NCBI GenBank assembly: GCA_965644315.1
Contig: CBFFRQ010000069.1
Location: forward strand, 1,178,001-1,242,000
DNA: 64,000 bases
Reading direction: 5' to 3'
Source: Caecitellus pseudoparvulus
Lineage: Eukaryota > Protista > Bigyra: Bicosoecida
Made by a program: the position numbers and the translations under genes
The notes under the pieces: model-generated
Told to the model about the DNA's origin: nothing
Database searches by the model: none
Seen by the model: the letters and a program-made list of their open reading frames with translations, nothing else
Shown here: positions 1 to 15,000 of the stretch, piece by piece
Layout of the letters: every line of letters starts with the position of its first letter
Position numbering within the stretch: position 1 is the first letter of the stretch

Positions 1-3000
1 GTTTCGACAACGGACGGGGTGGAAGAAGTGCAGAGTATCACCGTTGCACACCCAGATGGGGTCTCAGGGACCTTTCAGCTCAAGTTGGCGTCAGAAGTAA
101 CGGTCCCCCTGCGCCACAATGCCAGTGAGGTTGAAGTAGCTGCAGCCTTGAAGCAGATGAAGGCCATCAGTCGAGCAACCGTGCATCGGCAAAGTCTGGA
201 CTCAAACCTTGACGGTGCAGTCGACGGGTACAAGTGGATCCTTCGCATGAGGAGCAGTGATGTCCATCAGACGCCCGATCTTCCCGACCTTGTCGTTGTC
301 AGCAGCTTATCTCCAGCATCAGCGGGAATCAACTCGTGCCCCTCCCAGTGTGTGGATGGCTCGCCACCAGCAGACTACGCAGCTTTGCGGCTGTCGTCAA
401 GGTCCTCAAATCAGCGCCATGAATGTGCCGCCTTTGCCGATGGACTTTTCTCAGGACCTTGCATGGCAGGAGAAAGCACGGTGTTTACTATCATGTCGTC
501 AGTCGCTGACGATGATAGAAGCTCGTACGGTGGCTCATTTGTGCTCTCCTACGGCGGAAAAGAAACACGGCTCCTCTCAGCCACTGCCTCCGCAGCAGAC
601 GTCCAAGCCCAGCTTGCAGACGTGATAGGCACTGACTTTTCCGTTGAAGTCGATCGTTACGAGTACACGCAGACTGGAGCGCCAGAGGTACACCAACAGC
701 AGTGGGGGATCAAGTGGCACGCGAGGATCACGCCTTCCGGAGCCATTGATGTTGAGGACCTCTCTGTGTTGACCCACTCATTCACTGGTGAAGATGCTGC
801 AATTGCTGTGTTCAGGAGCATCTTTGTTGAGACATCAACCGCCCGGGGTCCGCTCAATGGCGCGTTCGTGGTCCGTGCACAGCACGAACAAACAGCCCCC
901 CTGTCTGTTGATGCATCGGCTGAAGCAGTACAAGAAGAAGTGGAGGCGCTGCTGGGTGTCGGAAAGGTCCATGTTGATCGCACTTTAAGCTATCGAGCAA
1001 GTGGGGCACGCGTGGTTGGCAGGCCAGGCGATGGCTTTGTCCGCAGTTCGATGGATGTCTCTTCAAGCGCCTTCCCTGTAAGTCAGGGCTCTCGTTTACT
1101 CATAGCAGGCGATGAATTCTCAGTCTGCCATGATGGTGTTGCAGCGGTGAATCTGGATGCACAGGCAATTCCTCTGTGTGAAGCAGCCAATCCGAACGTG
1201 CAGGCGACGTTCTCGGGCCCAGGAAGCGCCCCACTAGACTTGCTGGTCCACGCAAACGGGTACCAGTGGTGCATCACCCTCATGGTCAGTGTGCACAATG
1301 TGCAGGATTTCTTTGCCATCCCAGGGCCTGGGTTCGCTGGAGTCGGCTCTGTTCTCCGAACTTCAACAGGAGCTGGCCTCCGCCCGTTCACTGTGCACGT
1401 TGGACAGCCTAGCCCAGTGCACACAATCGTGCTGAAGGACCCATTCTTCAACACAGCTACATCTGTAAGCTATCCAGATGTCGGGTTCCGCTTGGAGTTC
1501 GACGGAAGGCAGACAGAGTGCCTGAGGTGGCACAGTGACGACGGGGAAGCGCTGTCAAGCAAGCTGACAGCCGCCATCCAAGACGTTGGCGGAGAACCAC
1601 ACGTGCAAGCTCATGCAGTCAAGCGAGGCTCCGGTCTTGAACCTGACTTTTTTGGCTACACTATCACCGTCTCATACTCCGGAGCTGCAGAGAGTCTAGT
1701 CAGCATCCCCCAGCTATCCGTCACAACTGCAGGGTGCACAGATCCCGCGTACCCTGGAACTGTGCTTGCCGACGAAGCAGTCCTGCACTCAAGGTCCCTC
1801 CCATGGCGCGAGACGTTCTTGTCCCTGGAGCCGGGCCGGGAGTACCAAGTAAGGGTGTCTGCTGAGAACTCCTTCGGCATTGGTGAACCGTCGGACGCTG
1901 TCCACTTCACGACGCCAAACTTGGCCCAGACCCCTGGAGCAGTGCAGGCTGTAAACCTTGTAGATCTTCACACTGGGGACGGGGTGGAGGTCTTCTTTAA
2001 GGCCCCACGCGAGGACGGTGGAGACCCCATTCTCAAGTACTCTGTCGAGATCGACACCCTTCCAACGTTCACAGGCACAGCGTACCGGAAGGTGGACGTC
2101 GCTTCCGTCCCTGAGGAGCAGGAAGTGACCCTGAACTTTGCCTCAGACTCGTCGCGAGGGGGATTTTTCGTCCTTGGCCTAGGAATCAAGCGCACTGACC
2201 GCTTGCCATGGAATGCCCACGCGCGACAGATCGCAAACTCGCTTGCCAGGGCCTTGGGCGCGTACAGCCAAGCATACGAGCCCATCGAAGTCAACCGCGC
2301 GCCTTACGAGAACGGCTTTAAGTGGTTCATTACGTTCAACGGTCTCTCGGGGGATGTGGGTACCCTGCAGGCAGATTCGAGTGGCCTTCTGGGTGTCAAG
2401 CCAACAGTTACGACAAACGAAGTCCTGAAGGGGCGCGCAGATATTGTCCCGGGAAGTTTCTCCTTCGAAGAGCAGCTCATCTCCATTGAGGCATTAAGTC
2501 CACTGAGCGGTACCTTCACTCTTGACTTTGAGGACGAACAGACGGAACCCATAAGTGTTGGGGCCTCTGCAGCGGATCTCGCAGCTGCCTTGGACGGCCT
2601 CTCAAGCATCCACACTGTGTCAGTCTCTGCGGTTCCAGCACTGGCTTACAGCGAGTTTGGAGCGCACCCATCACACCCAGCTGCAACACACTCTGAAGTT
2701 GCATCCCCTGCCCGAGCATCTGCCTGGATGGTTACCTTCACCCACATGGTGCATGAGCGCTACCAAGGAGCAGGGAACATTGGGATGCTGCGCATGAACG
2801 CGTCATTGACCTTGGGAACCGCACTTCGAGCCTCAGTGACCGAGTTCAAGCGAGGAACAGAACCCCTTCGGCTGGTGCTCTCAGGCCTTTCCGCTGGTGT
2901 TTCGTACTTCGCACGAGTCACAGCTTACAACAGCCGTGGGCACGGACTGCCCAGCTCGGTTGTCTCTGAGACCCCGACCTCACAACCTGGCCCTCCAGAG

Positions 3001-6000
3001 CATGTTTCTGTGGCTGTCTCCAACGCAGACAGTCTCGATATCTCCTGGAAGGCCCCTCAGAGTTTTGGGGGGGAACCTTTGTCGAGTTTCTCTGTCCAGT
3101 GGTATGCGGAGCCTCCAGTCCGCCCCGTGCAGACCGTCAGCGTCTCCGCCAGCTCGGGTGTGCCCGATGTGCAACACATTCAGACGCTTGCAGATGCGGA
3201 TGACATTCAAGGCGCCTTCCGAGTCATGATGGGAAACAGCACAAGCGAAGACATTCCTCATGACGCCTCAGCGGCGCAAGTCAAGCAAGCATTGTTGCGC
3301 ATGCCATCTGTGAACGCTGTCGAGGTCTCCAGGGCTCCGTCATGGATCCGGATTCCAGGCACGTTCAGGCTTGAACAAGGAGGAAGCTCTGTAACAGTGT
3401 CAGATGGAGGAACAGCAGCGCTTCTGCCCCTTCAACTCACGCCTGGCACAGACTTGCGTGTCGGAACGGCAGAGCAGTTCACAGAGCCCGCCGACTTGCC
3501 GGCCTTCAGAGTGTGTTCGTCATGTGGGGCGCCAACCACGGCGGGCTTCACATTGGCAGACGCCCGCCTCAGTGGATCATCCACGGCTGCCACGTGGGAG
3601 GGCGAAACCTTTGAGTACTATGTGCTCTACAAGCCGGGACACGGGTATGTGTGGTCGGTCACCTTTTCCGAGACGGGGCATGTCGGGAGACAAGAACGCT
3701 TAGTCGCAGAGCCTGGGACAGGATTCATTGGCACGAACGTAGCTCTCCAAAGCCGAAGTAAGCGAGCTGGGGAGAGTGCACTATCGGGGGTCTTTAGACT
3801 GTCCAAGGGTGGGGCCACGACCGCCCCGATCCCTCATGACGCAACAGCTGAGCAGGTGAAGTCAGCGCTGACGGCACTGCCAACTGTTTCCACAGTGGAT
3901 GTGTCACGAATCCAAAATGGGCACGGCTTTGATTGGATTGTCACGTTCACGTCGGACATCGGGCCCCTTCCCGTGATGACGATGCACGACGCTTCCTTGT
4001 TGGGCCCTGATGCGAGAGGGTACGTCACAATGACGCGACAAGGAAGTGCTCCAGGGGGGTATGGGCATCGAGAAGTGCCTGTGCAAATGTCCCAACCAGA
4101 TAGAACGTACTCGTACACAGCGACCGGCTTGCAGACAGGCTTGCGCTACACAGTCCAGGTTGCGGCAGCCAACGCTCACAATGGGCTCGGTGCAGCCACG
4201 GAAGTTACCGAAAGCACACAGGAGACTCCGAGAACGGCACCAGGGGCGCCGTCAGTCGTTGGTCTGTATGTCTTGTCAGACTCATCCCTCAAGTTGGTGT
4301 GGTCGTATCCCGATGACGGTGGGGCGATATGCAGTCGATACGAAGTGCAGTGGAGCAAGTCAAGCTCATTCTCCGGAGGCCTTGGCCAAGTCGGCTCCCT
4401 TATCTATGAAGATCATGCAGTATCTCTGCCTGTCACGTCGCGCCAGTTCTTCCAGAACTTGGCGCTCCTGGATGCTGGAGTGCAGTACTACGTGAGGGTT
4501 CGAGCGCAGAACGACATGGGCTTCGGCGCCTGGTCAGCAATTGTCTCTGCGATGCCAGGTGTTCAAAGGCCCGGCGCACCATTGAATCTCACTGTAACTG
4601 TCATCAGCGGGGTACAACTCTTAGTGGCATGGGAGCCGCCCTCGCAGGATTTGCTAGTCTATGGAGGCAATGGCGGCCTGCCTGTCGAGCGCTACCTCAT
4701 CGAGTGGGACAGCCCCTTGTTCTCCTTGGTGGCCTCACCCGCAGCTGGCTCATTTGAGCTGGAAGATGGCAGCGCAACGTCGTACATCATCGGTCATCGA
4801 GATTCCATCACTGGGTATGAAGATGGAACCTTGGAAAGAGGCCAACAGTACTCCGTGAGAGTGGCTGCGTGGTCAGCGGCAGGCTACGGAGACTACGGAA
4901 TGCCTGCCAGCGGACCTGTTACATTGACAGATCAACCACCCAGTGTCATTCGCGAAATGCGAGTACAGGCTGTGGGTCAATCATCGCTGACAAGTGCTTG
5001 GGCACTGCCGCGGTTCGACGGTGGTCGCACGCTTCAGTCTGTCGTTGTCGAGACTGACTCATCTGAAGGCTTTGGTGCGCCTCGCCAAGATGAAATTCCA
5101 TTCGTGTTTGAGAAGCAAGCCGTTACTCTCAAGTCTAGCACCTCTGTTGAGGTGCAGCACGTGGACGTGCTTGTCGACGTAACAAACGAAGTGCAAACAA
5201 TCACTTCCACCGTTCATGGAGCCGATGAAGTGCAGACAATAGCCTTCGAGTCACGCCCAGTGGTCGCACACGTTGACACTGTCACTACATCGACCGTGGA
5301 TGTGAATGAAGTGCAGCGGATTACGGCCGGTGGGATCGCCGCACCAGAAGAGCAAGTCATCACCACGACCACACCCAACGCTGGAAACCCTGTTAGAGAG
5401 GTGCAGGTCATCAAAACCAGCTCCGTGGACATTGACGAAGTGCACTTCATCGAGCTGTGGGATGACAATGCGGAGACCCAGGCTAGTCAGACTGTGCATG
5501 TTCTGTCAGCGAGCCATGCAACCACCCCAGCTGGTCTAGATGCCCAAACATTTACCATCAACTGTGGATTGACTGCCGCTGACAAAGTTACATTCGAGAT
5601 GGATACCGATAGCAGCTACGTCCATGGATCCACTGCGTCGTACGTCCACGTTACGATCACCAACCTCACCACCCATGGAATAGCCTGGGAGCTATCAAGT
5701 GCCCTCTCCCTGCACTACGCTTCTGCGCCTTCAAACCAGGGTGCCATTCTACCACCAGGACTTGCTGGGAATGTTTTGACGGTGACGTGCCGTGACGCGC
5801 GCGAAGCTGGCCCTGTTGACGATGTGGCTATCGCCAACGTGTTTTCTTCCCTCGGGAGCCACTCTCGCGGCTCAGATGATCGCCACTTGGACCGAAACGT
5901 TACGTTCTCACTTTCAGTTGACCTCTCTCGATGCACACTGTGCACGTGTAGCCCGTTGTGCTACGTTGGGGGTGCCCAAGCACACGCAGACATGTCTGGG

Positions 6001-9000
6001 GCAGAGATGCAGACAGTCCTTGACAGCTTGAGCCCGTTGACAGGGCAGGTGACAGTGACCCGCGAGGACAACGGCACGAATGCTAACTACCGCCGTTGGC
6101 ATGTGACGTTTGATGGCGCTGCAGTGAACGGTGATATCCCAAGTGCCACGAATTCCAGGCAGAATGCCGTACACATGCACGATGCTGTCCTGGCCAACGC
6201 AGATGGATTCAGCGGCGGCGATGCGACCCGTTGGGGTGCAGTTAGCGAAGGAAACGAGATAAACGCAGGGAGGTTTGTTGTGTCCTACACCGACTTTTAC
6301 ACGGGTGTGACGGAGTCTCTCTCCGTGGGGGGAGTATTGCATGACGCCCCTGGCTCTGCCCTGGAAGGGGCACTCAGCCTTCAAGAGCGACTGCAAACCC
6401 TGAGCAAGATCAACGCCGTCTCAGTTTCTCGCTCTGTACCAGATGCAGCAGGTGGCTATGAGTGGACCATCACCTTCTCCGGGAATGACGGGGATCTCCA
6501 CGCGTTGGAAGTTCACAGCATGAGCGCAGACCCGCTAGGAACCTCGACTGGGGCACTTGTGTCTGTGGAGGTATGCCCCAACTCAACTGCATGCAGAAAC
6601 GGAGAGTTCATTGACCCAGCGAGCACTTGGACAATCAGCATTCCTGGGTTTACATCATCGATGGCTCCGCTGCGCGCCAATGCGACACAGCTCGAGGTCG
6701 CAGCGTACATTCACGGCATGCAAGACGTGAACGGCGCTCCTCACCCAGCTGTGAACGTTGGCCGCCCGGTGCAAGTGCCGCCGTACGGAATGGGGTGGAC
6801 AGGTGGATTTGAATTTAGGGTTCAGTTTGTTGGCATTCCAGGTGACATCCCTGAGGTGCTGGTCAACGACTCTGGGCTACATGGGGTGCCAGAGCGCGAA
6901 GGACACCTTCACAGGTCTGCCTCGGCATCTGTACACACTGAGGCACATGGAAACACTGTCCAAGGATGGTTCAAGCTCCAGCACCGTGGATCTGTAACGC
7001 CTGCGATTGATTTGCTCGCAGGGGTCTCGCCCTCAGCGCCAAGGCAGTGGCCTGACCCCACTGCCGTTGCCACACAAATCAAGGCAGCGCTGGAGTCACT
7101 CAGCAGCATTGACGAGGTCACTGTTTCAGTGGATGAGACGGTACATGGCACTGGACCGTACATTCCCAATGCTGTGGGCGGTTTCTCCTGGCTTGTCACG
7201 TTCACTGACTCCCTTAATGGGGGTAACGTCGAGCAGCTGACGGTTGCAATGGCGTGTGATGGAACGACGTCACCGGCAGCCCCTGGGACCTTGGCCTGCC
7301 TACAGCTTCGCTCACCTCGATCAGGAGGAGAAGTAAGCTTGGATCTGGACACAGCCGTGGAAGGGAACCAGCTGGATGGCTCCTTCAAATTGTCCATTGG
7401 GGGCTTCACGACGGGGGAACTTGCCTACGATGTGAGCGCGGCCGAGCTTGAGGCCGCCCTCGAGCTCTTGCACAGCACCGGGCCCATCACTGTGACCAGG
7501 CACCTCCCATCTGGTGTGCCTTCTGTTCAAGAGAACGAAAAGCAAGAATTTGTGTGGAAGATCACCTTCTCAAGCGATACCCACACGGGGGTGGACTCAG
7601 CAAGCGATTGGGCAAGTGGATACTCCAAATCATGGGGCAAGAACATTGGCCGTTCTTTGACTCCGTTGCTTTCCTGTGACGCAAGCACGCTGGAAGATAG
7701 CAACAAAGATGTCTCTAGCCACGCTTGCGTCACAGGGGTGGATGAACCTGGTGTTTCCCCTGTAAACGGCTTCTTCCGCCTGCACTTGGATACACTCACA
7801 AGCTGCGCCGCCCCTGGCTCACCCTACGCGTGCACCGACGAGGAAACTGGTGATATCCGCCATGATGCACAGGCATCTCGAGCAGATGCCGCTGCCCTTG
7901 GTTTGGATCCAGAGACGAGCGTGGAAGCAGCACTGGAAGCGTTGTCCAATGTCGGTGACGTTGCCGTGACTAGGCGGGCTGCTTCCTCTCCGTTCACAGG
8001 AGCATACGAGTGGTCTGTCACATTCCTGCGAGATGGATCATCTCCAATGTGCTTGGAGGGCGTCCCTGCAGCATGCCCATCCCCAGGCGATGTCCCACTG
8101 CTGTCCATTGCGAATGCTGGCGCAGGCCTCCCCATCTTGTCTGCCGAAGGCGACCCTTCCTTCAACACCACTGTGTCTGAAACCACGAAAGGAAACGTCA
8201 TCGCAGGGAACTGGTCGGTGCGCACGGCTTCTGGATATGCCTTGCCGCTCCTGAGCTTTGACGTGACAGCGGATACACTGCGACAACGCCTGGCAGAGAG
8301 CCCAGATCATCCAACGCTGCTGGTATCCCGCCAGCGCACGAGCAAATTCCGGACGTATCAGTGGAGAGTCACATTCGTAGAGAACCAAGGATTCATCCCA
8401 ACTGGTGCAGGGGATATTCCAAACATGCTGATGAATGCGTCCTTGCTTACAGACGGAGACGGAGTGTCGGGCTCCGCCAACATGCACGTTGCACAGGCGG
8501 TGCAAGGTTCCGAGCCTTTGGGGGGGCGCTTCAGCATCGACATGATGGGATCAAACACAGGACCTCGGGATGTAGTCTTCAGCATCAGCGAATCCAGGCT
8601 GGAACTCGAGCTGGAGTCCTTGAACAACGTTGTTGATGTCGCAGTGCGAAGCAACCGATCCTTTGGGGCAGGCTGGGCAGGACAGCATGTGGCCCCGCAT
8701 GGCCAACCTGGAGGACTGCGGTTCACTGTATCTTTCCTCAAAAACGCAGGCACTACTGAAGGGTTTACCTTTCCTCCTGGATCTGGCAACAGGGACGCGC
8801 TGACGCCTTCATTCTCGGGCCTGAGCGGAACCAACTGCCGAGTCGTAGTTTCCACACACCAGGACGGTGCCGAGCCCCTCCACGGCACATTCTCACTGTC
8901 TGTTGCCTCCCAAGCAGTGACACTTCCCTATGACGCCTCTCAGACCAGCGTGGCCACAGCGCTGTCATCTCTCACTTCGACAGGTCAAGTGTCTTCCAGC

Positions 9001-12000
9001 AGGCACCTGTACTACGGCAGCCTGCTCGGTAACGTTCACATTCAAAGCCCGGGGGCTGCAGTCCTCGAGGGGGAGAGAGGTGTTGACTTTGCGTCCATCC
9101 TTGCGGTTGGTGACAAGATTCGAGTCGGGGGGCCGCCATTGCAAGCATCCTCGGCTGATGGTGAAGTGTGGCTCGGCAAAGCCATAACAGTCGGTGGATC
9201 GCCTGTGCTGACGATGGTTGAAGGCTTCAGACAGCATCTTTTTGTGGGTGCAACATTGCGCATTGGAACTTTGGTGGCCAATGTCACGGATTTGCTGGCT
9301 GCTGAGCAGACCATCCAGGTTGTCTCGCCAAACCTGCCACTTGACTCTGACCCTGGGGCGTTCAAGCTCGTATACGTGCGTCCGAGTGGGGAACTTCGCT
9401 CCTCAGCATGCTTGTCTCTTGCTGCAAGTGCTGCAGAGATGAGGAACGCCCTCTCTTCGCTTGTCAGCGACCCCCACGTTCATGTAGCTCGCGCAGGAAA
9501 CGGCTCTGCTGGGGTGGGATTCTCCTGGGCAGTGACATTCAAAGGACTCAACGACGTTGCCTCTGTCCGCAACGCATTCAATGGGTCACCCAGCGTTGTC
9601 ACTGTTGATGTGCACAATGACGCTGGAGTTTCAGCATCAGTTGAATGTCCAGCCGCTGCTGCTGGCGACCTGATCTTCTCTTCAAGCATGATCAAGAATG
9701 GCTCAGCAGCAGAAGTGACCCTCAGCGCACCGGCTGCTTCCTCGTCAACGTCCCCTGTAGAAGTGTTTTACCAAGCTGAAGTGTTCAGTGTTGTATCTGC
9801 GACGAAAGAGCAGCAAGAGGTTTGGATGTCAGCCGGTTCCTCTGGCTCTTTCGGGCTGTCTGTGGGAGCTAGTAGCACTGGGTGCTTCAATGCTTCCATT
9901 GATGAAAGCCAAGCGCTTGAGGTAGCCCTGCGGTCAATGGGGCTTGATGCCATGGTGGCCTTCACCAGACACCGTGGCACCCTTGAAACAGTCTACCGAA
10001 TAGCCTTTTCGGCGCCAGGGGACCAAGTGGACATGACACTCGATATGAGTTGCAGCTTCACTGGTGAAGCCCGAATCAGTGTCCCACAGCAGGGCACAAG
10101 TGGCGAAGTGTTCGAGCATCATGCAGCGAACGGCACATCATTGATTCCCATACACAAGGGCACCTTGAGTCCGGTTGGGCTGTATCCCGTGTACAAGGTG
10201 AACGGCTGGACTCACGTGGTACACTTCGAAACACATCTGGGGGATGTGGAAGGGATGGGAGCAACGTCGCAGCTAGAGGGCTCAGATGCAAGCGTACAAG
10301 TGCACGATGACTTCATTCAAGGGTTCGCACCCCTGTCCTTTACGACACAGCCCTTGCTTAGTGGCATCGACTACCATGTGCGGGCATCTGCCAAGAGCGC
10401 GATCGGTGTGAGTGCATGGAGTGCAACAGCCACTGGCATGCCAAGCGCGCCTCCTTCGGAACCCACATCCCTTGTTGTTGCCCCTTTGACGCGAGTGTAT
10501 GAGGTGCAGAGTGTGACAACCGCAGCAAGGCACCTGGACGAAGTGCAAAGCATTCGCACGCGTGCCGCTGAGGTTCCCGCGAGACAAGCCATCGTGACAA
10601 GCGCACCGGACTCTGGCACACTGTCAGGGGTGGTCCTTGTTTCGCTTGAAGGCGAGAGCATGACATTTGCCCACAATGCTAGTGCTGCGGAAGTGAAGCA
10701 GGTCTTGGAGGCCTTCTCTGCAGTGAATCGGGTGTCCGTTACTCGCAACGGGCAGACGGCCGAGGGCGGGTTCCAGTGGACGGTCGAGTTTCACAACACA
10801 TCACTGCCTGACCCGCTGCCGTTGGTGGGTTGCAACGCCTCGCACCTGCATTCCAGCGTCGGAGAAGCACGGTGCATTTCAAGAATGGAGCGGCCGAAGA
10901 ACGTGCTGGGGGGGACATTCTACCTCCGCTTGGGGCACCACTCCACTGCTAATCTGGCACATAGTGCCAGTGCCGGAGACGTGCGCAGGGCTGTTGAGGC
11001 CTTGCTTAACCCCCAAGAGGCAGACGTTGCTGTTTCCAAGCTGGGGCCTGACGCACAGGGCGGATGCGAGTGGCGCGTCACGTTCAAGGCACTGAAAGGA
11101 GACGTGCCAGAGCTTGTGCCTGTCAGCTCGCTAACCGGCGTCAGAGCCGAGGTCACAGTGGCCGAGGTGCAAAAGGGAAACCAACTGGAAGGCCACTTCA
11201 CCTTGTCTTTCGGCGGACGGACGACTGACGCCCTGCCCTTTGACGTGTCGGCCACTGCCTTGCAAACCGCGCTGAACATGTTGCCATCCGTTGACTTCGT
11301 CTCTGTCCAGCGGAATGTGCTCCAAGACGAGCAAGATGGGTGCACGTGGCAAGTGACTTTCATGCAGAAAGGGGATTTGCCGCTGCTGGGCTCTTCTGCT
11401 GCAGGTCTGACTGGTGAGGGTGCAGCGGTGCTCGTGCAGGAGCAAAGGAAGGGTGCCATTGAATCTGGATCGGCGCTTTCCGTGTCCTTCTCGCCTCCTG
11501 TTAACACTGGTGGGCGAGCGGTAACAGCGTACACTGTTGAATGGGACACAACTCCGACGTTTTCATCTCCGGACGCAGGGAGTATGCACGTCGCCGAAGC
11601 TGACCTGCTGCACCAGTACCAGAGTGTCACCCTTTCTGCTGACGCTGCCTCCTACTCCGGAACTTTCCAGCTGCAGTACAACGGCTCCACCACTGAGCCT
11701 CTTCCGTTCTGGGCCGATGCAGCGGAGGTCCGCGATGCTCTTGAAGCCCTTCCCAGCATCCATGCAGTGGCAGTTGACACAGACGACGGGAAGACCCCTG
11801 TCGGAACAGGCTCTCTCGACGCAAGTCCAGCCGAGTCGGTCCTTCTCGCCCATGACTTAGCCGCGCAATTCTCTGTCGGTGACTTGATTTGGGTGGGGCA
11901 TGAGAAGCTTCGGGTGAGGGCAAGCAGCTCAGCTGGCGCTCTTACCCGGGTGTACTTTGGCACCTACAATGACCACACTGTCGTTGACTATGCTGAATCA

Positions 12001-15000
12001 CCAGCAACAGAGTATACCATCTTTGCTTCAACAAACGGGTCAGCGTACGCGGTGCACTTCTTGTCTGTGGTCGGCCCATTCCAGCCACTTCACGTGCCCA
12101 TGCCGCAGGCAGCCGGCGCTGTTGTCCTGGGAGCAGTCTCAGGCAGAGCCTGTGATGGCTGCCTTCACATTCGCCCCTTGGCCAAGGGGGTGGCGCACTA
12201 CGTCCGTGTTGTTGCTCACAACGCGGCTGGGCGGGGCCAGAGCACATTAGCTGTCGTTGACGTACCGAGGCAGGTGCCAGCTGCTCCTGCTGCTGTCCAG
12301 GCCGTTGTTGCCTCGCATGAAAGCGTACTTGTTCGCTGGCAGCCGCCCGTGGACGACGGCGGCGGTGCTATTGATCGCTACCTTATTGAGTGGGACCCCC
12401 TGGCAACATTCAGCTCAACGCCAGCCAACTCTCCTGCCGGTCAGGCTCTTGTGAAGGTGGATAGCTTAGGAGCACCACCATTCTCCTTCAGCATTCACGC
12501 TTGGAACAGCAATGGAAGCCTTCGATCGCTTGTGAATGGGACGACTGTATTTGTGCGGGTGGCAGCTGTCAACGATGTACCCGTGGACAGCAATGCGATG
12601 TGGGGCAGCATGGACAGCAGCATCCAGGTGGTAGACAACAGGGTGTGGGGGTACAGCTCACCTTCACACGTGACAACAACATACCAGGCGCCATCGGCAC
12701 CTTCGAGCGTCACACTCCTCGCTCTGTCAGGAAGCATTTGCAGAGTGTCCTGGGCGCTCCCTGATCTGGACGGTGGCCGGCCAGTCACCGCATACACGGT
12801 TGCGCTTGACTCAGTCCCTTCTTTTGACTCGCCATTGAATGATGAGAGTCGCATCTTTGATGTTGCGCACTTGAAAGCTCTAAGCCCAGGTGGTGAGGTG
12901 CAAGTAGATCTTACTGGCTTAGAAAGCGGGAGGGTGTACTTTGCTCGGGTGCGTGGGGAAAACGCTGAAGGGCCCGGTGCCTGGTCAGCTGCAACAGGTG
13001 GTGTGGTGCCCATCGCACCCCCTGGACAGAGCGCGACGACGCAAGCTTCCACCATTTTACAGTCAGATGAGCCCGTGTCATTCATCGATGTTACCTGGTC
13101 TCCACCTGCTCACACAAATGGGGCAGAAGTGACAGGCTACCTGGTTGAGTGGTTCACCAAAAAGGAAGTGCCCACCGTGCAGCGAGTCTTCCTCTCATCC
13201 CCAAAGGGTCGAAGCGACATTGACACTGTAAGTGGCACTTTCATGCTGCTCTTCAAGGGTGAAAGCACAGTCCAGATGCCCCAGGATGTGTCGGCAGCAG
13301 ACATGCGTCGCCATCTGATGCACTTGCAGAATAGCTCGACAGGCAGCTACCTAATTCCCGACGTGAGGGTCACACGAGATGAGACCCCCTCCGGCTACTC
13401 CTGGGATATTGCCTTTGTTGGGATGCCGGGGGCAGTTCCACAACTTCGAGCTGATTCAAGCAACTTGGTCTCGGTAAGCAGGTGTGATGGTGCGGGCACC
13501 AACGCCTGCCTCGATCTACGTGTGGATGAGGATGAATACTTGCAGGGCAGGCGAGAAGGAGGCTCACCCCAGGTACAAGTACTGACTTTCTTGCAGGATG
13601 AAGCATCCAACTCAGCGCCACATGGCTTCGTCACTCTCTCTGTGGCAGGGTCGTTGCCGACACCGCCTCTCGACATCTCCAGCCCGGCGGCGTACATCGC
13701 TGAAGCACTAGGCAACTTGCCGACCGTGCGGCAAGTACATGTCACAACCACGCCAGTATCCACGAGCTGTTCGCTGGCGCATGGATGTGAAGACGGACTT
13801 CAGATGCAAGTCACATTCCTTCCGGCAGGCGTTGCCGTTCCACCCATCGTGCTCGACGCATCCAACTTGCAAGGTGGAGAGTCTCTCGTCGCCTCGGTGC
13901 ACTCAGATGGCGTGGATGTGGGCGCGGACTCCAGGGAGCTGTGCGAGCTCTGCAAGCCTGCAGAGATTCCTGTGGGGTACAACGCAACGCTCCTGCCTGA
14001 AGACGCATTCTCGTACAAGATCAGCGGCCTGACCTCTGGTGAGTCGTACGCGATTCGCGTGAGTGCGGTGAACGCTGCGGGTGTGGGCCAGCCCTCGCTT
14101 GCCTTGTGCACACCCAACTCCGCGGCGTACTGCCGAGAGAGCCCTTATCTCACCGTCCCGCAACAGCGCCCGGGGGCCCCAGAGGGCGTGTTGGTTGAAG
14201 TGCAGCCGGGTGTGTCAAGTGAGCTTGCTGTTTCATACCAGCCGCCCCATTCAGATGGAGGCGCATCCATCCTAGCATACCGAATCGACTGGTCGGCTGA
14301 TCCCGACTTCGCATCATCCAGCAGCGTGGAAGTGAGCTGCCCGAGCAACGCGGCAAGGCAGGTCGTCTTCATCTCAACGATCGCCCAAAATGGCTCATCT
14401 TCCATTGTAGGGGGCACATTTTCGCTGCAAGTGCAGCACGCAGGCGTCACTGCGCTCTCTTTACCCATTCGCTTTGACGCCACTGCGTCCATGAGCGATG
14501 AAGAGCCTGGACAAGGCAGCGGCGTCTTCTGTGATCCATCTGCTCCTCATGAGCCTTGCGACCAGAGTGCAGTTGCGAATCCGGGAAGCATGCAATCTCA
14601 CCTTCAGTATCTGCCAAACGTACACAGTGTGTCTGTCAGTCGGGCAGGCACCAATGGTGAGCACGTGTGGGCCGTGACATTCAATGACGCTGGAGGGGAC
14701 TGGCATGTCAGCATCGTCGACAACAGCCTGGAGAATAGCTCCGGTAGCGTCGGGTCGAGTGGGGTCGCCATCCACACAGATGTCAAAGTGCAGGGAGAAG
14801 ACCCCTCCTCCCTTCACTGCCTGGGCACACAGACCATCCGTGGCCTGACTCAGGGCCTCCCGTACTTCGTCCGGGTTTCAGCATACAACATGCTGGGCTA
14901 TGGTCCCGTTCGAAACGCGGTGAACCCAGCAGGCCTTCCTGCGCAAGCACCTATGCGAGCCCCAGGGCGGCCAACTGGAGCTGCTCTGAGCGTTGTGAGT

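What the first reader, a model, noticed from the sequence alone, without database searches (positions are those of the whole stretch)
4933..10420. Nine-deep 'Russian-doll' nested domain stack inside a single split FN3 domain
Seen: elsewhere in this protein the ~100-aa module begins with one strand (E.Q.I/V) directly followed by its body (G.F.L..ASA..V..ALE.L..W.VTF..GD.P.L). Here, after the first half of an FN3 domain (QPPSVIRE..W..PRFDGG..VVETD, ~4933-5070), nine first strands occur back-to-back with no bodies at 5107-5463: EKQAV, EVQHV, EVQTI, EVQTI, HVDTV, EVQRI, EEQVI, EVQVI, EVHFI. A capping domain follows, then nine bodies that lack a first strand at ~5890-10330, starting VTFSL, GRFVV, STWTI, GWFKL, GSFKL, GFFRL, GNWSV, GRFSI, GTFSL. 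Only then does the FN3 second half appear (LLSGIDYHVRASAKSAIG). Inference: each module is inserted in the loop after the first strand of the previous one, like matched parentheses. The chain would run out as a thin strand and return through the bodies, forming a ~1,700-aa strand-complemented hairpin rod projecting from the FN3 backbone. Linear domain annotation would miss this, and I know of no description at this depth.
Basis: partly seen in the sequence, partly recalled or inferred. Interest (0 to 1): 0.88.

Follow-up and report, generated by a model that had tools for sequence, protein, structure and literature searches.

The report
Nine protein modules nested like dolls
Inside one split FN3 domain of a giant secreted protein from a marine protist, nine small phage-like modules are predicted to sit one inside the next, each closed by a short strand encoded up to 1,700 residues earlier, which would be the deepest domain nest I could find on record.

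Summary

- **What is there.** An FN3 first half is followed by nine short EVQxI-type strands (s1-s9) spaced 13 residues apart. Then come a ~140-residue insert, nine strand-less module bodies (B1-B9), and the FN3 second half.
- **Counts in relatives.** In 162 homologs (oomycetes, marine metagenomes), strand and body counts inside FN3-bracketed units lie on the diagonal (r = 0.95). More than 25 orthologs keep nine strands.
- **AlphaFold2, seven layers.** With s1-s9, the insert and only B1-B7, s3-s9 fold as confident strands while s1 and s2 stay disordered.
- **Pairing.** Single-domain PDB matches span s9+B1, s8+B2, s7+B3, s6+B4, s5+B5 and s3+B7.
- **ESMFold2, outer layers.** A split-chain model (score 0.70, best control 0.00; the mark was reached by 51 of 78 solved complexes and 2 of 108 mismatched pairs) puts s2 inside B8 and s1 inside B9, and re-closes the FN3.
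- **The module.** It is homologous to the C-terminal extension domain of mycobacteriophage Bxb1 capsid and tail proteins.

All structural evidence is predicted. The "cap" was not resolved. The scan already found the same rule, four deep, in a neighbouring gene of this genome. A 2026 survey names six levels as its deepest nested example.

The parts
4933..5088 (+). FN3 first half (strands A-C/C'), the host domain that opens the nest
   Evidence: FN3 N-half profile hit at aa 1646-1685. Its C strand (VV of SVVVETD) contacts the F strand of the distant second half in the split-chain model.
5107..5130 (+). s1 (FEKQAVTL), predicted strand of body 9
   Evidence: residues EKQAV pair with HVVHF, the WxVTF strand of the body 9 C-part, at 0.6-0.7 A expected error. 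It is disordered when body 9 is absent.
5146..5172 (+). s2 (VEVQHVDVL), predicted strand of body 8
   Evidence: it lies between the RFTVS strand and the trailing RVVVS strand of body 8. It is disordered when body 8 is absent.
5185..5211 (+). s3 (NEVQTITST), predicted strand of body 7
   Evidence: AF2 strand E36-42, pLDDT about 87-93. Single-domain matches span model residues 31-33..1138-1146.
5224..5250 (+). s4 (DEVQTIAFE), expected strand of body 6
   Evidence: AF2 strand E48-55, pLDDT about 94. This is the only layer whose pairing no alignment range showed. It is assigned by elimination.
5263..5292 (+). s5 (AHVDTVTT, degenerate motif), predicted strand of body 5
   Evidence: AF2 strand E62-69. 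The Bxb1 capsid CTE domain aligns over 89 residues at 2.3 A to model 59..889, Z 11.0. Most orthologs in the alignment have a canonical EVQ or EIQ at this position.
5305..5334 (+). s6 (NEVQRITA), predicted strand of body 4
   Evidence: AF2 strand E76-83. Matches span 71-75..756-762.
5344..5370 (+). s7 (PEEQVITTT), predicted strand of body 3
   Evidence: AF2 strand E88-95. Matches span 85-86..619-626.
5392..5421 (+). s8 (REVQVIKT), predicted strand of body 2
   Evidence: AF2 strand E105-112. Matches span 103..497-508.
5431..5463 (+). s9 (DEVHFIEL), predicted strand of body 1, the innermost module
   Evidence: AF2 strand E118-126. Matches span 115-117..389-394.
5464..5892 (+).
   Evidence: pLDDT 30-40 in AF2, with only 3-8 alignment rows covering it. 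Absent in the oomycete orthologs, where s9 runs straight into body 1. No Pfam or ESM Atlas family.
5893..6255 (+). Body 1 (VTFSL...)
   Evidence: Module HMM hit. AF2 pLDDT about 76-92.
6256..6606 (+). Body 2 (GRFVV...)
   Evidence: Module HMM, E = 2e-17. AF2.
6607..6951 (+). Body 3 (STWTI...)
   Evidence: Module HMM, E = 4e-11. AF2.
6952..7365 (+). Body 4 (GWFKL...)
   Evidence: Module HMM, E = 3e-19. AF2.
7366..7755 (+). Body 5 (GSFKL...)
   Evidence: Module HMM, E = 8e-21. AF2 pLDDT about 90-97.
7756..8193 (+). Body 6 (GFFRL...), with long loops
   Evidence: Module HMM, E = 2e-12. AF2.
8194..8511 (+). Body 7 (GNWSV...)
   Evidence: Module HMM, E = 2e-18. AF2.
8512..8871 (+). Body 8 (GRFSI...)
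   Evidence: Module HMM, E = 2e-11. It receives s2 in the split-chain model.
8872..9003 (+). Body 9, N-part (GTFSL .. helix .. VSSSR)
   Evidence: Module HMM partial hit, profile positions 7-62.
9004..10170 (+). Insertion inside body 9: a barrel-like piece plus two complete strand+body modules
   Evidence: Module HMM hits at P0001 4083-4203 and 4243-4348. Strand PSSM hits AEQTI and KEQQE.
10171..10323 (+). Body 9, C-part (WTHVVHF .. GDVEG .. trailing strand ASVQVHDD)
   Evidence: Module HMM partial hit, profile positions 67-104. It pairs with s1.
10324..10443 (+). FN3 second half (strands E-G; YHVRASA), closing the host domain
   Evidence: FN3 C-half profile hit at aa 3445-3470. Its F strand contacts the C strand of the first half.

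Best explanation
The stretch encodes a side branch of a giant extracellular FN3-chain protein.

**Topology (predicted).** The chain leaves an FN3 domain after its C/C' strands. It runs outward as nine short beta strands, one every 13 residues, and turns at a poorly conserved tip. It then returns as nine ~100-residue alpha/beta modules before finishing the FN3 domain. Each returning body takes one outgoing strand as a central strand of its sheet, between its WxVTF strand and its trailing strand. The order is last-out, first-in: s9 with B1 through to s1 with B9.

**Consequences.** The nine modules are discontinuous domains nested nine deep inside the FN3. Both ends of the branch meet at its base.

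**Origin of the module.** It is a homolog of the C-terminal extension domain on the capsid, tail tube and tail tip of mycobacteriophage Bxb1.

**Inferred, not shown.**
- The 13-residue period (at most about 4.3 nm when extended) matches the pitch of one module, so the stack would be a two-layer rod roughly 30-40 nm long.
- Folding would proceed from tip to base like a zipper as each body is made.
- The branch hangs beside the FN3 backbone, not in series with it, giving a bottle-brush surface protein.
For: **Shown by sequence**
- One uninterrupted frame. Strain differences from RNA-library contigs are 30 synonymous to 9 non-synonymous, with no indels and no splice joints.
- Inside 438 FN3-bracketed units from 162 homologs, strand and body counts lie on the diagonal (r = 0.95).
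- The nine strand positions align column by column across about 45 orthologs, each with its own conserved flavour.
- One relative (P0002) reads as an almost perfect balanced-bracket word reaching depth 15.

**Predicted structure**
- AF2 on s1-s9 + tip + B1-B7 (92-row alignment, mean pLDDT 78.5). s3-s9 are strands at pLDDT 78-95. s1 and s2 are coil at about 50, although their alignment depth is the same.
- Single-domain PDB matches of 72-119 residues at 2.3-4.3 A begin at s_k and end at the end of B_(10-k) for six of the seven layers. None contradicts this.
- The 3-deep nest in the same protein folds at pLDDT 94.3 and pTM 0.83, with the same last-in-first-out ranges.
- ESMFold2, run without alignments, on FN3 N-half+s1+s2 against B8+B9+FN3 C-half:
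  - Scores were 0.69, 0.70 and 0.71, and the best of 3 controls was 0.00.
  - The mark was reached by 51 of 78 solved complexes and 2 of 108 mismatched pairs.
  - The runs agree in at least 77% of contacts and the partner's pLDDT is at least 82.
  - The contacts are s2-B8, s1-B9 and FN3 strand C with strand F.

**Homology**
- The module profile hits Bxb1 gp23 at E = 7.7e-35, the capsid protein at 3.7e-5 and the tail tube protein at 0.011.
- Structural Z scores are 10.5-11 at 2.2-2.7 A over 87-89 residues.
Against: - Nothing is experimental, and model coordinates could not be inspected. Pairings come from one contact list, from first and last aligned residues, and from the behaviour of a truncated construct.
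- The s4-B6 pair was never seen directly.
- Both predictors favour simple topologies and may have learned nested hairpins from flagellin-type proteins.
- The AF2 alignments contained homologous nests, which favours the adjacent s9-B1 pairing, though not the distant pairs.
- The tip insert is unresolved.
- pTM for the long fragment is only 0.50, so the straight-rod shape is not established.
- The models used P0001, which differs from the window protein at 9 of 1,837 residues in this region. None of the differences is in a strand.
Confidence: 0.8

Rival explanations
1. The same strand-into-body fit is used between molecules. The exposed strand cluster of one chain fills the bodies of another, as in donor-strand exchange of chaperone-usher pili, giving fibres or a cross-linked coat and not a closed intramolecular branch.
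For: The split-chain test shows that the strands can dock in trans with high confidence. The protein is secreted and giant: homolog P0003 starts with what reads like a signal peptide (my reading of the sequence). Strands of different layers look alike.
Against: Counts balance within each FN3-bracketed unit of a single chain, which trans pairing does not require. AF2 closes the nests within one chain at high confidence. Each strand position keeps its own conserved sequence.
Confidence: 0.08
2. The strand cluster is only a repetitive linker or its own small sheet. The bodies are self-sufficient domains, and the balanced counts reflect duplication history rather than structure.
For: The strands are short and alike. 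Eight-residue strands with five-residue turns could form a meander. The tip and some loops are low-confidence.
Against: s1 and s2 lose structure exactly when their two bodies are absent, while s3-s9 do not. A self-contained sheet would keep all nine. The solved Bxb1 domains that superpose on the models align from the s strand to the end of one body: s1+B3 at 2.4 A over 89 residues and s5+B5 at 2.3 A over 89 residues. Contacts place the strand between two body strands.
Confidence: 0.05
3. The strands do complement the bodies, but in another register or order, for example first-in-first-out or shifted by one.
For: Counts alone cannot tell the orders apart. The s5-B5 pair fits both orders. The s4-B6 pair was not observed.
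Against: Eight of nine layers were observed, and all fit the last-in-first-out order: s1-B9 and s2-B8; s3-B7, s6-B4, s7-B3, s8-B2 and s9-B1. The truncation left the first two strands unpaired, not the last two.
Confidence: 0.03

Closest known systems
C-terminal extension (CTE) domains of mycobacteriophage Bxb1 capsid gp14, tail tube gp19 and tail-tip gp23 (PDB 9d9w/9d9x, 9d94, 9d93)
   Same: This is the same domain family by sequence profile (E = 7.7e-35 to gp23) and by fold (Z 10.5-11, 2.2-2.7 A over 87-89 residues). By sequence, gp23 shows three N-halves followed by three C-halves, so the family also self-nests in a solved structure. PHROG tail-sheath and major-tail families also match.
   Different: [quoted passage not shown] The gp23 nest is three deep and is cut at another site, between the VxVxR and WxVTF strands. 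Here the cut follows the first strand, the depth is nine, and the host is a eukaryotic FN3 chain.
Recursive insertion of hybrid-motif domains in the Si3 region of cyanobacterial RNA polymerase beta' (six-level nest; Protein Sci 2026, PMC13114784)
   Same: One small domain family is inserted into itself again and again, giving an A1-B1-C-B2-A2-type nest. It is the deepest example named in a survey of 2.7 million classified domains.
   Different: The fold and the protein are unrelated. That nest has six levels against nine here, and up to about 15 by token count in relative P0002. It has no regular strand cluster or 13-residue period. As far as I know such surveys rest on AlphaFold DB, which leaves out proteins this long. 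I did not check that.
Flagellin, FliD and phage tail-sheath outer domains (hairpin-nested D1-D2-D3)
   Same: The chain goes out through the N-terminal pieces of successive domains and comes back through their remainders. Weak fold likeness to the FliD D2/D3, flagellin and sheath insertion domains (Z 4.4-6.9).
   Different: Those nests have two to four levels of different domains. The Z values are in the range of common arrangements, so homology is not shown.
Donor-strand complementation in chaperone-usher pili
   Same: An incomplete beta domain is completed by a strand supplied from elsewhere.
   Different: In pili the strand comes from another subunit and fills an edge groove of an Ig-like fold. 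Here it is predicted to come from the same chain and to lie between two strands of an alpha/beta module.

Membership tests
Bxb1-type CTE domain (phage capsid/tail decoration domain) | Significant sequence-profile match to the solved CTE and CTE-like domains | tested here: met
   Profile of the modules against PDB sequences: gp23 7.7e-35 (three stretches), capsid protein 3.7e-5, tail tube protein 0.011.
Bxb1-type CTE domain (phage capsid/tail decoration domain) | Same fold over the whole domain, first strand included | tested here: met
   Predicted modules superpose on 9d9x_Ha 305-397 (Z 10.8-11.0, 2.3-2.4 A, 89 aa) and on 9d94 gp19 192-283 (Z 9.7-10.6, 2.2-2.5 A, 87 aa). These are predicted models, not solved ones.
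Bxb1-type CTE domain (phage capsid/tail decoration domain) | A curated family exists to which it can be assigned | tested here: not met
   No Pfam-A hit even at E = 1. Only the PHROG tail families phrog_2839 and phrog_10909 match.
Fibronectin type III (host domain) | Both halves match FN3 and are separated only by the insert | tested here: met
   Half-domain profiles built from intact FN3 domains of the same protein hit aa 1646-1685 and 3445-3470. N-halves and C-halves alternate along the protein; the one exception is the neighbouring doubly interrupted FN3, whose N-half is seen only in part. Pfam fn3 alone finds neither half.
Fibronectin type III (host domain) | The halves form one sandwich, with the C strand beside the F strand | tested here: met
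   Split-chain model contacts: VV of the C strand with RA of the F strand, 0.6 A expected error. This is a prediction only.
Recursive nested domain insertion (as in RNA polymerase Si3) | Each domain is discontinuous and wholly encloses the next in sequence and in structure | tested here: met
   Eight of nine layers were mapped to s_k + B_(10-k). The truncation behaves as a nest predicts.
Recursive nested domain insertion (as in RNA polymerase Si3) | Homology to the hybrid-motif (SBHM) domains | tested here: not met
   No such domains appear among the sequence or fold matches. It works like this family but is not a member.
Flagellin/FliD outer-domain family | Fold match clearly above background | tested here: inconclusive
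   Z 4.4-5.9 over about 90-110 residues, within the range the tool calls a common arrangement.

The most novel reading that the evidence does not exclude
This family of giant stramenopile surface proteins uses a phage-derived module with a detachable first strand as a general grammar, n strands followed by n bodies, to build rigid side branches on a linear FN3 chain. The nests would be nine deep here and up to about fifteen deep in relatives. That is deeper than any nest I found on record. They would fold tip-to-base like a zipper.
Probability: 0.6. Interest if true: 0.85.

Novelty: new variant of a known kind. Interest (0 to 1): 0.8.

Why it matters
Domain insertion is common, but deep recursion is rare. 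A 2026 survey of 2.7 million classified domains gives six levels as its deepest example (PMC13114784).

A conserved nine-level nest, with relatives reaching about fifteen, built on a simple strand-then-body rule would have several consequences:
- It would show how a linear chain can make long rigid branches.
- It would pose a sharp folding problem, because a strand must wait for up to 1,700 residues of synthesis before its body exists.
- It would give protein designers a natural template for split, self-zipping modules.
- Linear domain annotation misses it entirely. Pfam sees nothing in these 1,829 residues.
- It links a eukaryotic surface-protein module to a decoration domain of actinobacteriophage virions.

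Tried and rejected
- **Pfam on the region and on single modules:** nothing, even at E = 1.
- **First alignment for folding (A1):** unusable, because MAFFT piled all single modules onto one body. I replaced it with rows of whole nests and body triplets (A2).
- **Simple run-length pairing of strand runs and body runs:** only a weak relation (Spearman 0.38), because sub-nests break the runs. FN3-bracketed units gave the clean test.
- **Local MAFFT on the 1,150-residue set:** timed out. The alignment tool handled it.
- **ESM Atlas on the tip insert:** only unnamed clusters, no lead. An earlier Atlas call failed on a length rule.
- **Weak PDB sequence hits to tubular mastigoneme proteins (9ufe, E = 0.24 and 0.92):** not significant, so dropped. 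The mastigoneme literature search gave nothing relevant.
- **Literature searches** for nested FN3 in oomycetes, 'matryoshka' or 'Russian doll' domains, and 'tail tip cage': no prior description of this architecture. The phage Douge paper concerned other PDB entries.

Full report
**1. What is in the sequence**

Window 19..16080(+) is one open frame of 5,353 codons that runs in from the left edge. It is the C-terminal part of a 6,340-aa database protein, P0001, which is 99.5% identical to it. Nine residues differ in the region of interest, none of them in a strand. Pfam finds only FN3 domains in the protein and nothing at all in the 1,829 residues of the finding.

Below, 'aa' means residues of the window protein, where aa = (window position - 19)/3 + 1.

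| Element | Window position |
|---|---|
| FN3 first half | 4933-5088 |
| Nine short strands, one every 13 residues | 5107-5463 |
| Insert of about 143 residues | 5464-5892 |
| Nine module bodies with no strand of their own | 5893-10323 |
| FN3 second half | 10324-10443 |

Body 9 is itself interrupted (9004-10170) by a barrel-like piece and two complete modules, each with its own strand.

**2. The module**

I built a profile from the repeats of this protein and its relatives. The unit has three parts:
- A first strand, s (EVQxI).
- A body: GxFxL, a helix (ALExL), VxVxR, WxVTF, GDxPxL.
- A trailing strand.

The strict strand motif occurs 253 times in 14 homologs, against 0-4 hits in shuffled sequence.

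**3. The counting rule in relatives**

Homologs are giant proteins of 5,700-7,600 aa from oomycetes (Pythium, Globisporangium, Aphanomyces) and from marine and other metagenomes. An exhaustive search found 515 representative proteins at E <= 0.001.

I tokenised 162 of them into four kinds of element: strands, bodies, FN3 first halves and FN3 second halves. Of the 438 units bracketed by an FN3 first and second half, 212 held no module. In the rest, strand and body counts lie on the diagonal (Pearson r = 0.95):

| Strands, bodies in the unit | Units |
|---|---|
| 1, 1 | 37 |
| 2, 2 | 81 |
| 3, 3 | 7 |
| 4, 4 | 14 |
| 6, 6 | 9 |
| 9 to 15 of each | within about 2 of each other, which is my detection error; one outlier has 13 strands and 8 bodies |

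- More than 25 orthologs carry nine detected strands at this locus.
- In the alignment the nine positions line up column by column with the 13-residue period. Each keeps its own flavour, and most rows have a canonical EVQ or EIQ where the window has the degenerate HVDTV and EVHFI.
- One relative, P0002, reads as an almost perfect balanced-bracket word that reaches depth 15 and returns to zero.

Counts cannot say which strand goes with which body. That needed structure prediction.

**4. A solved relative**

A profile of the modules hits three proteins of mycobacteriophage Bxb1 in the PDB: tail-tip protein gp23 (9d93, E = 7.7e-35), the capsid protein (3.7e-5) and the tail tube protein (0.011).
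- These are the 'C-terminal extension' domains. They are known to be dispensable for infection and immunodominant (PMC8704799).
- The distal tail protein is described as having three more CTE-like domains (PMC13252515).
- In gp23 the alignments show N-half, N-half, a full domain, C-half, C-half. The family therefore self-nests three deep in a solved structure, although at a different cut site.
- PHROG tail-sheath and major-tail families also match.

**5. The 3-deep nest as a tractable test**

The same protein has three strands followed by three bodies at window about 10471-11511. AlphaFold2, with a 105-row alignment of homologous nests and body triplets, gave mean pLDDT 94.3 and pTM 0.83. All three strands scored 97-98.

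Single-domain targets aligned 85-97 residues at 2.2-3.5 A, and the model ranges fell into three classes only:

| Model range | Meaning | Example |
|---|---|---|
| 8-10..328-333 | s1 + body 3 | Bxb1 capsid CTE, Z 10.8, 89 aa, 2.4 A |
| 22..233-237 | s2 + body 2 | Bxb1 tail tube CTE, Z 10.6, 87 aa, 2.2 A |
| 34-37..139-143 | s3 + body 1 | cyanophage sheath domain 8kee_C, Z 6.3, 84 aa, 3.5 A |

That is the last-in-first-out order.

**6. Seven layers of the nine-deep nest**

I folded aa 1690-2843 (s1-s9, the tip insert and bodies 1-7) with a 92-row alignment of orthologs. A nest predicts that exactly s1 and s2 will have no partner.

The result matched (mean pLDDT 78.5, pTM 0.50):
- s3-s9 are strands (E36-42, 48-55, 62-69, 76-83, 88-95, 105-112, 118-126) at pLDDT 78-95.
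- Residues 1-30, which hold s1 and s2, are coil at pLDDT about 50.
- Alignment depth over s1 and s2 is the same as over the other strands (42-46 rows).
- In the 3-deep model an N-terminal strand scored 97, so chain-end effects do not explain the difference.

Structural alignments again gave discrete ranges:

| Model range | Meaning |
|---|---|
| 115-117..389-394 | s9 + B1 |
| 103..497-508 | s8 + B2 |
| 85-86..619-626 | s7 + B3 |
| 71-75..756-762 | s6 + B4 |
| 58-61..886-891 | s5 + B5 (Bxb1 capsid CTE, Z 11.0, 2.3 A) |
| 27-33..1138-1146 | s3 + B7 |

Only s4-B6 was not seen. Body 6 has long loops. No single-domain match contradicted the order. The tip insert came out at pLDDT 30-40 and is unresolved.

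**7. The two outer layers and the FN3 closure**

I split the system into two chains:
- Chain 2, the partner: FN3 first half + s1 + s2 (83 aa).
- Chain 1: body 8 + body 9 with its insertion + FN3 second half (647 aa).

ESMFold2, which did not use my alignments, gave the following:
- Scores were 0.69, 0.70 and 0.71, and the best of three controls was 0.00.
- The mark was reached by 51 of 78 solved complexes and by 2 of 108 mismatched pairs.
- The runs agree in at least 77% of their contacts, and the partner's pLDDT is at least 82.

The verdict is that the model supports binding; it does not show it. The lowest-error contacts are:
- s2 lies between the RFTVS strand and the trailing RVVVS strand of body 8.
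- s1 lies against HVVHF, the WxVTF strand of the body 9 C-part.
- The FN3 C strand lies against the FN3 F strand.

So the strand is a central strand of the sheet, not an edge strand, and the FN3 re-closes across about 1,750 residues.

**8. Is the gene real?**

- Contigs from a marine metatranscriptome, and from three runs that may be RNA, lie collinear on the stretch with no joints and no indels.
- Their 39 differences are 30 synonymous and 9 non-synonymous.
- Contigs cannot prove transcription, but the pattern is that of a constrained coding sequence without introns.

**9. Explanation and rivals**

Rivals:
- The same docking happens between molecules (0.08).
- The bodies are self-sufficient and the strands form a linker or their own sheet (0.05).
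- The strands pair in another order or register (0.03).

Three points are inferred from the geometry of the 13-residue period and from the topology, and are not shown: the rod shape, tip-to-base zipper folding, and a bottle-brush role on the cell surface.

**10. Novelty**

- Nested insertion is known from flagellin and FliD, phage sheaths and Bxb1 gp23. A 2026 survey of 2.7 million classified domains names the six-level nest in cyanobacterial RNA polymerase as its deepest example (PMC13114784).
- I found no description of this family or of this depth.
- The scan itself has already reported the same bracket rule, four deep, in a gene 26 kb upstream in this genome, with a follow-up that reached a similar reading (s1-641859).
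- I rate it a new variant of a known kind, of high interest, resting on predictions that now need a structure.

Noticed in passing
window 10471-11511 (aa 3485-3831): A second nest in the same protein: three strands then three bodies, lying between the A strand and the B strand of the next FN3. AF2 folds it at pLDDT 94.3 and pTM 0.83 with last-in-first-out pairing. It is the best construct for an experiment.
   Followed up: yes
window 9004-10170: Body 9 is split between its VxVxR and WxVTF strands by about 390 residues. These hold a barrel-like piece (GDKIRVGG...) and two complete strand+body modules. This is the same cut site as in phage Bxb1 gp23, so the module has two insertion hot spots.
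   Followed up: partly
window 5464-5892: The tip insert contains a tenth strand-like piece (QTVHVLSAS) and cysteine-poor beta segments. AF2 confidence is 30-40. Among the rows printed it is shared only with P0015, P0016, P0018 and P0022, and the oomycetes lack it.
   Followed up: partly
PDB 9d93 chain M (Bxb1 gp23), residues about 268-603: By sequence, the three CTE-like domains of this solved phage protein are arranged N-half, N-half, full domain, C-half, C-half. That is a three-level self-nest, and I did not see it remarked on in the papers I read.
   Followed up: partly
P0002 (7,591 aa, JGI metagenome), residues about 230-5300: Fourteen EVQ strands in a row are followed by bodies and sub-nests. 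The bracket depth reaches 15 and returns to zero. If the rule holds, this is a far deeper nest than the one in the window.
   Followed up: partly
P0034:344-426 and P0018:2757-2839 (alignment A4): In these two relatives the nine-strand cluster is not preceded by an FN3 first half. It follows something that looks like the end of another module, so the host of the nest may differ between lineages.
   Followed up: no
window 1-18 and upstream: The frame is open to the window's left edge. P0001 adds 987 residues, and its own start (MQQQGDVPLLG...) lies inside a module, so the true protein is probably longer than 6,340 aa.
   Followed up: no
window 4933-10420, public runs X1-X20: Near-identical sequence (0.27-0.95 of sampled words) is held by runs filed under several coded organism labels and as marine metagenome, ten studies in all. 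One is a run on record as metatranscriptomic RNA. The organism is marine and widespread.
   Followed up: partly
PDB 9ufe (tubular mastigoneme proteins): Weak, non-significant profile hits (E = 0.24 and 0.92) to stramenopile mastigoneme proteins.
   Followed up: no
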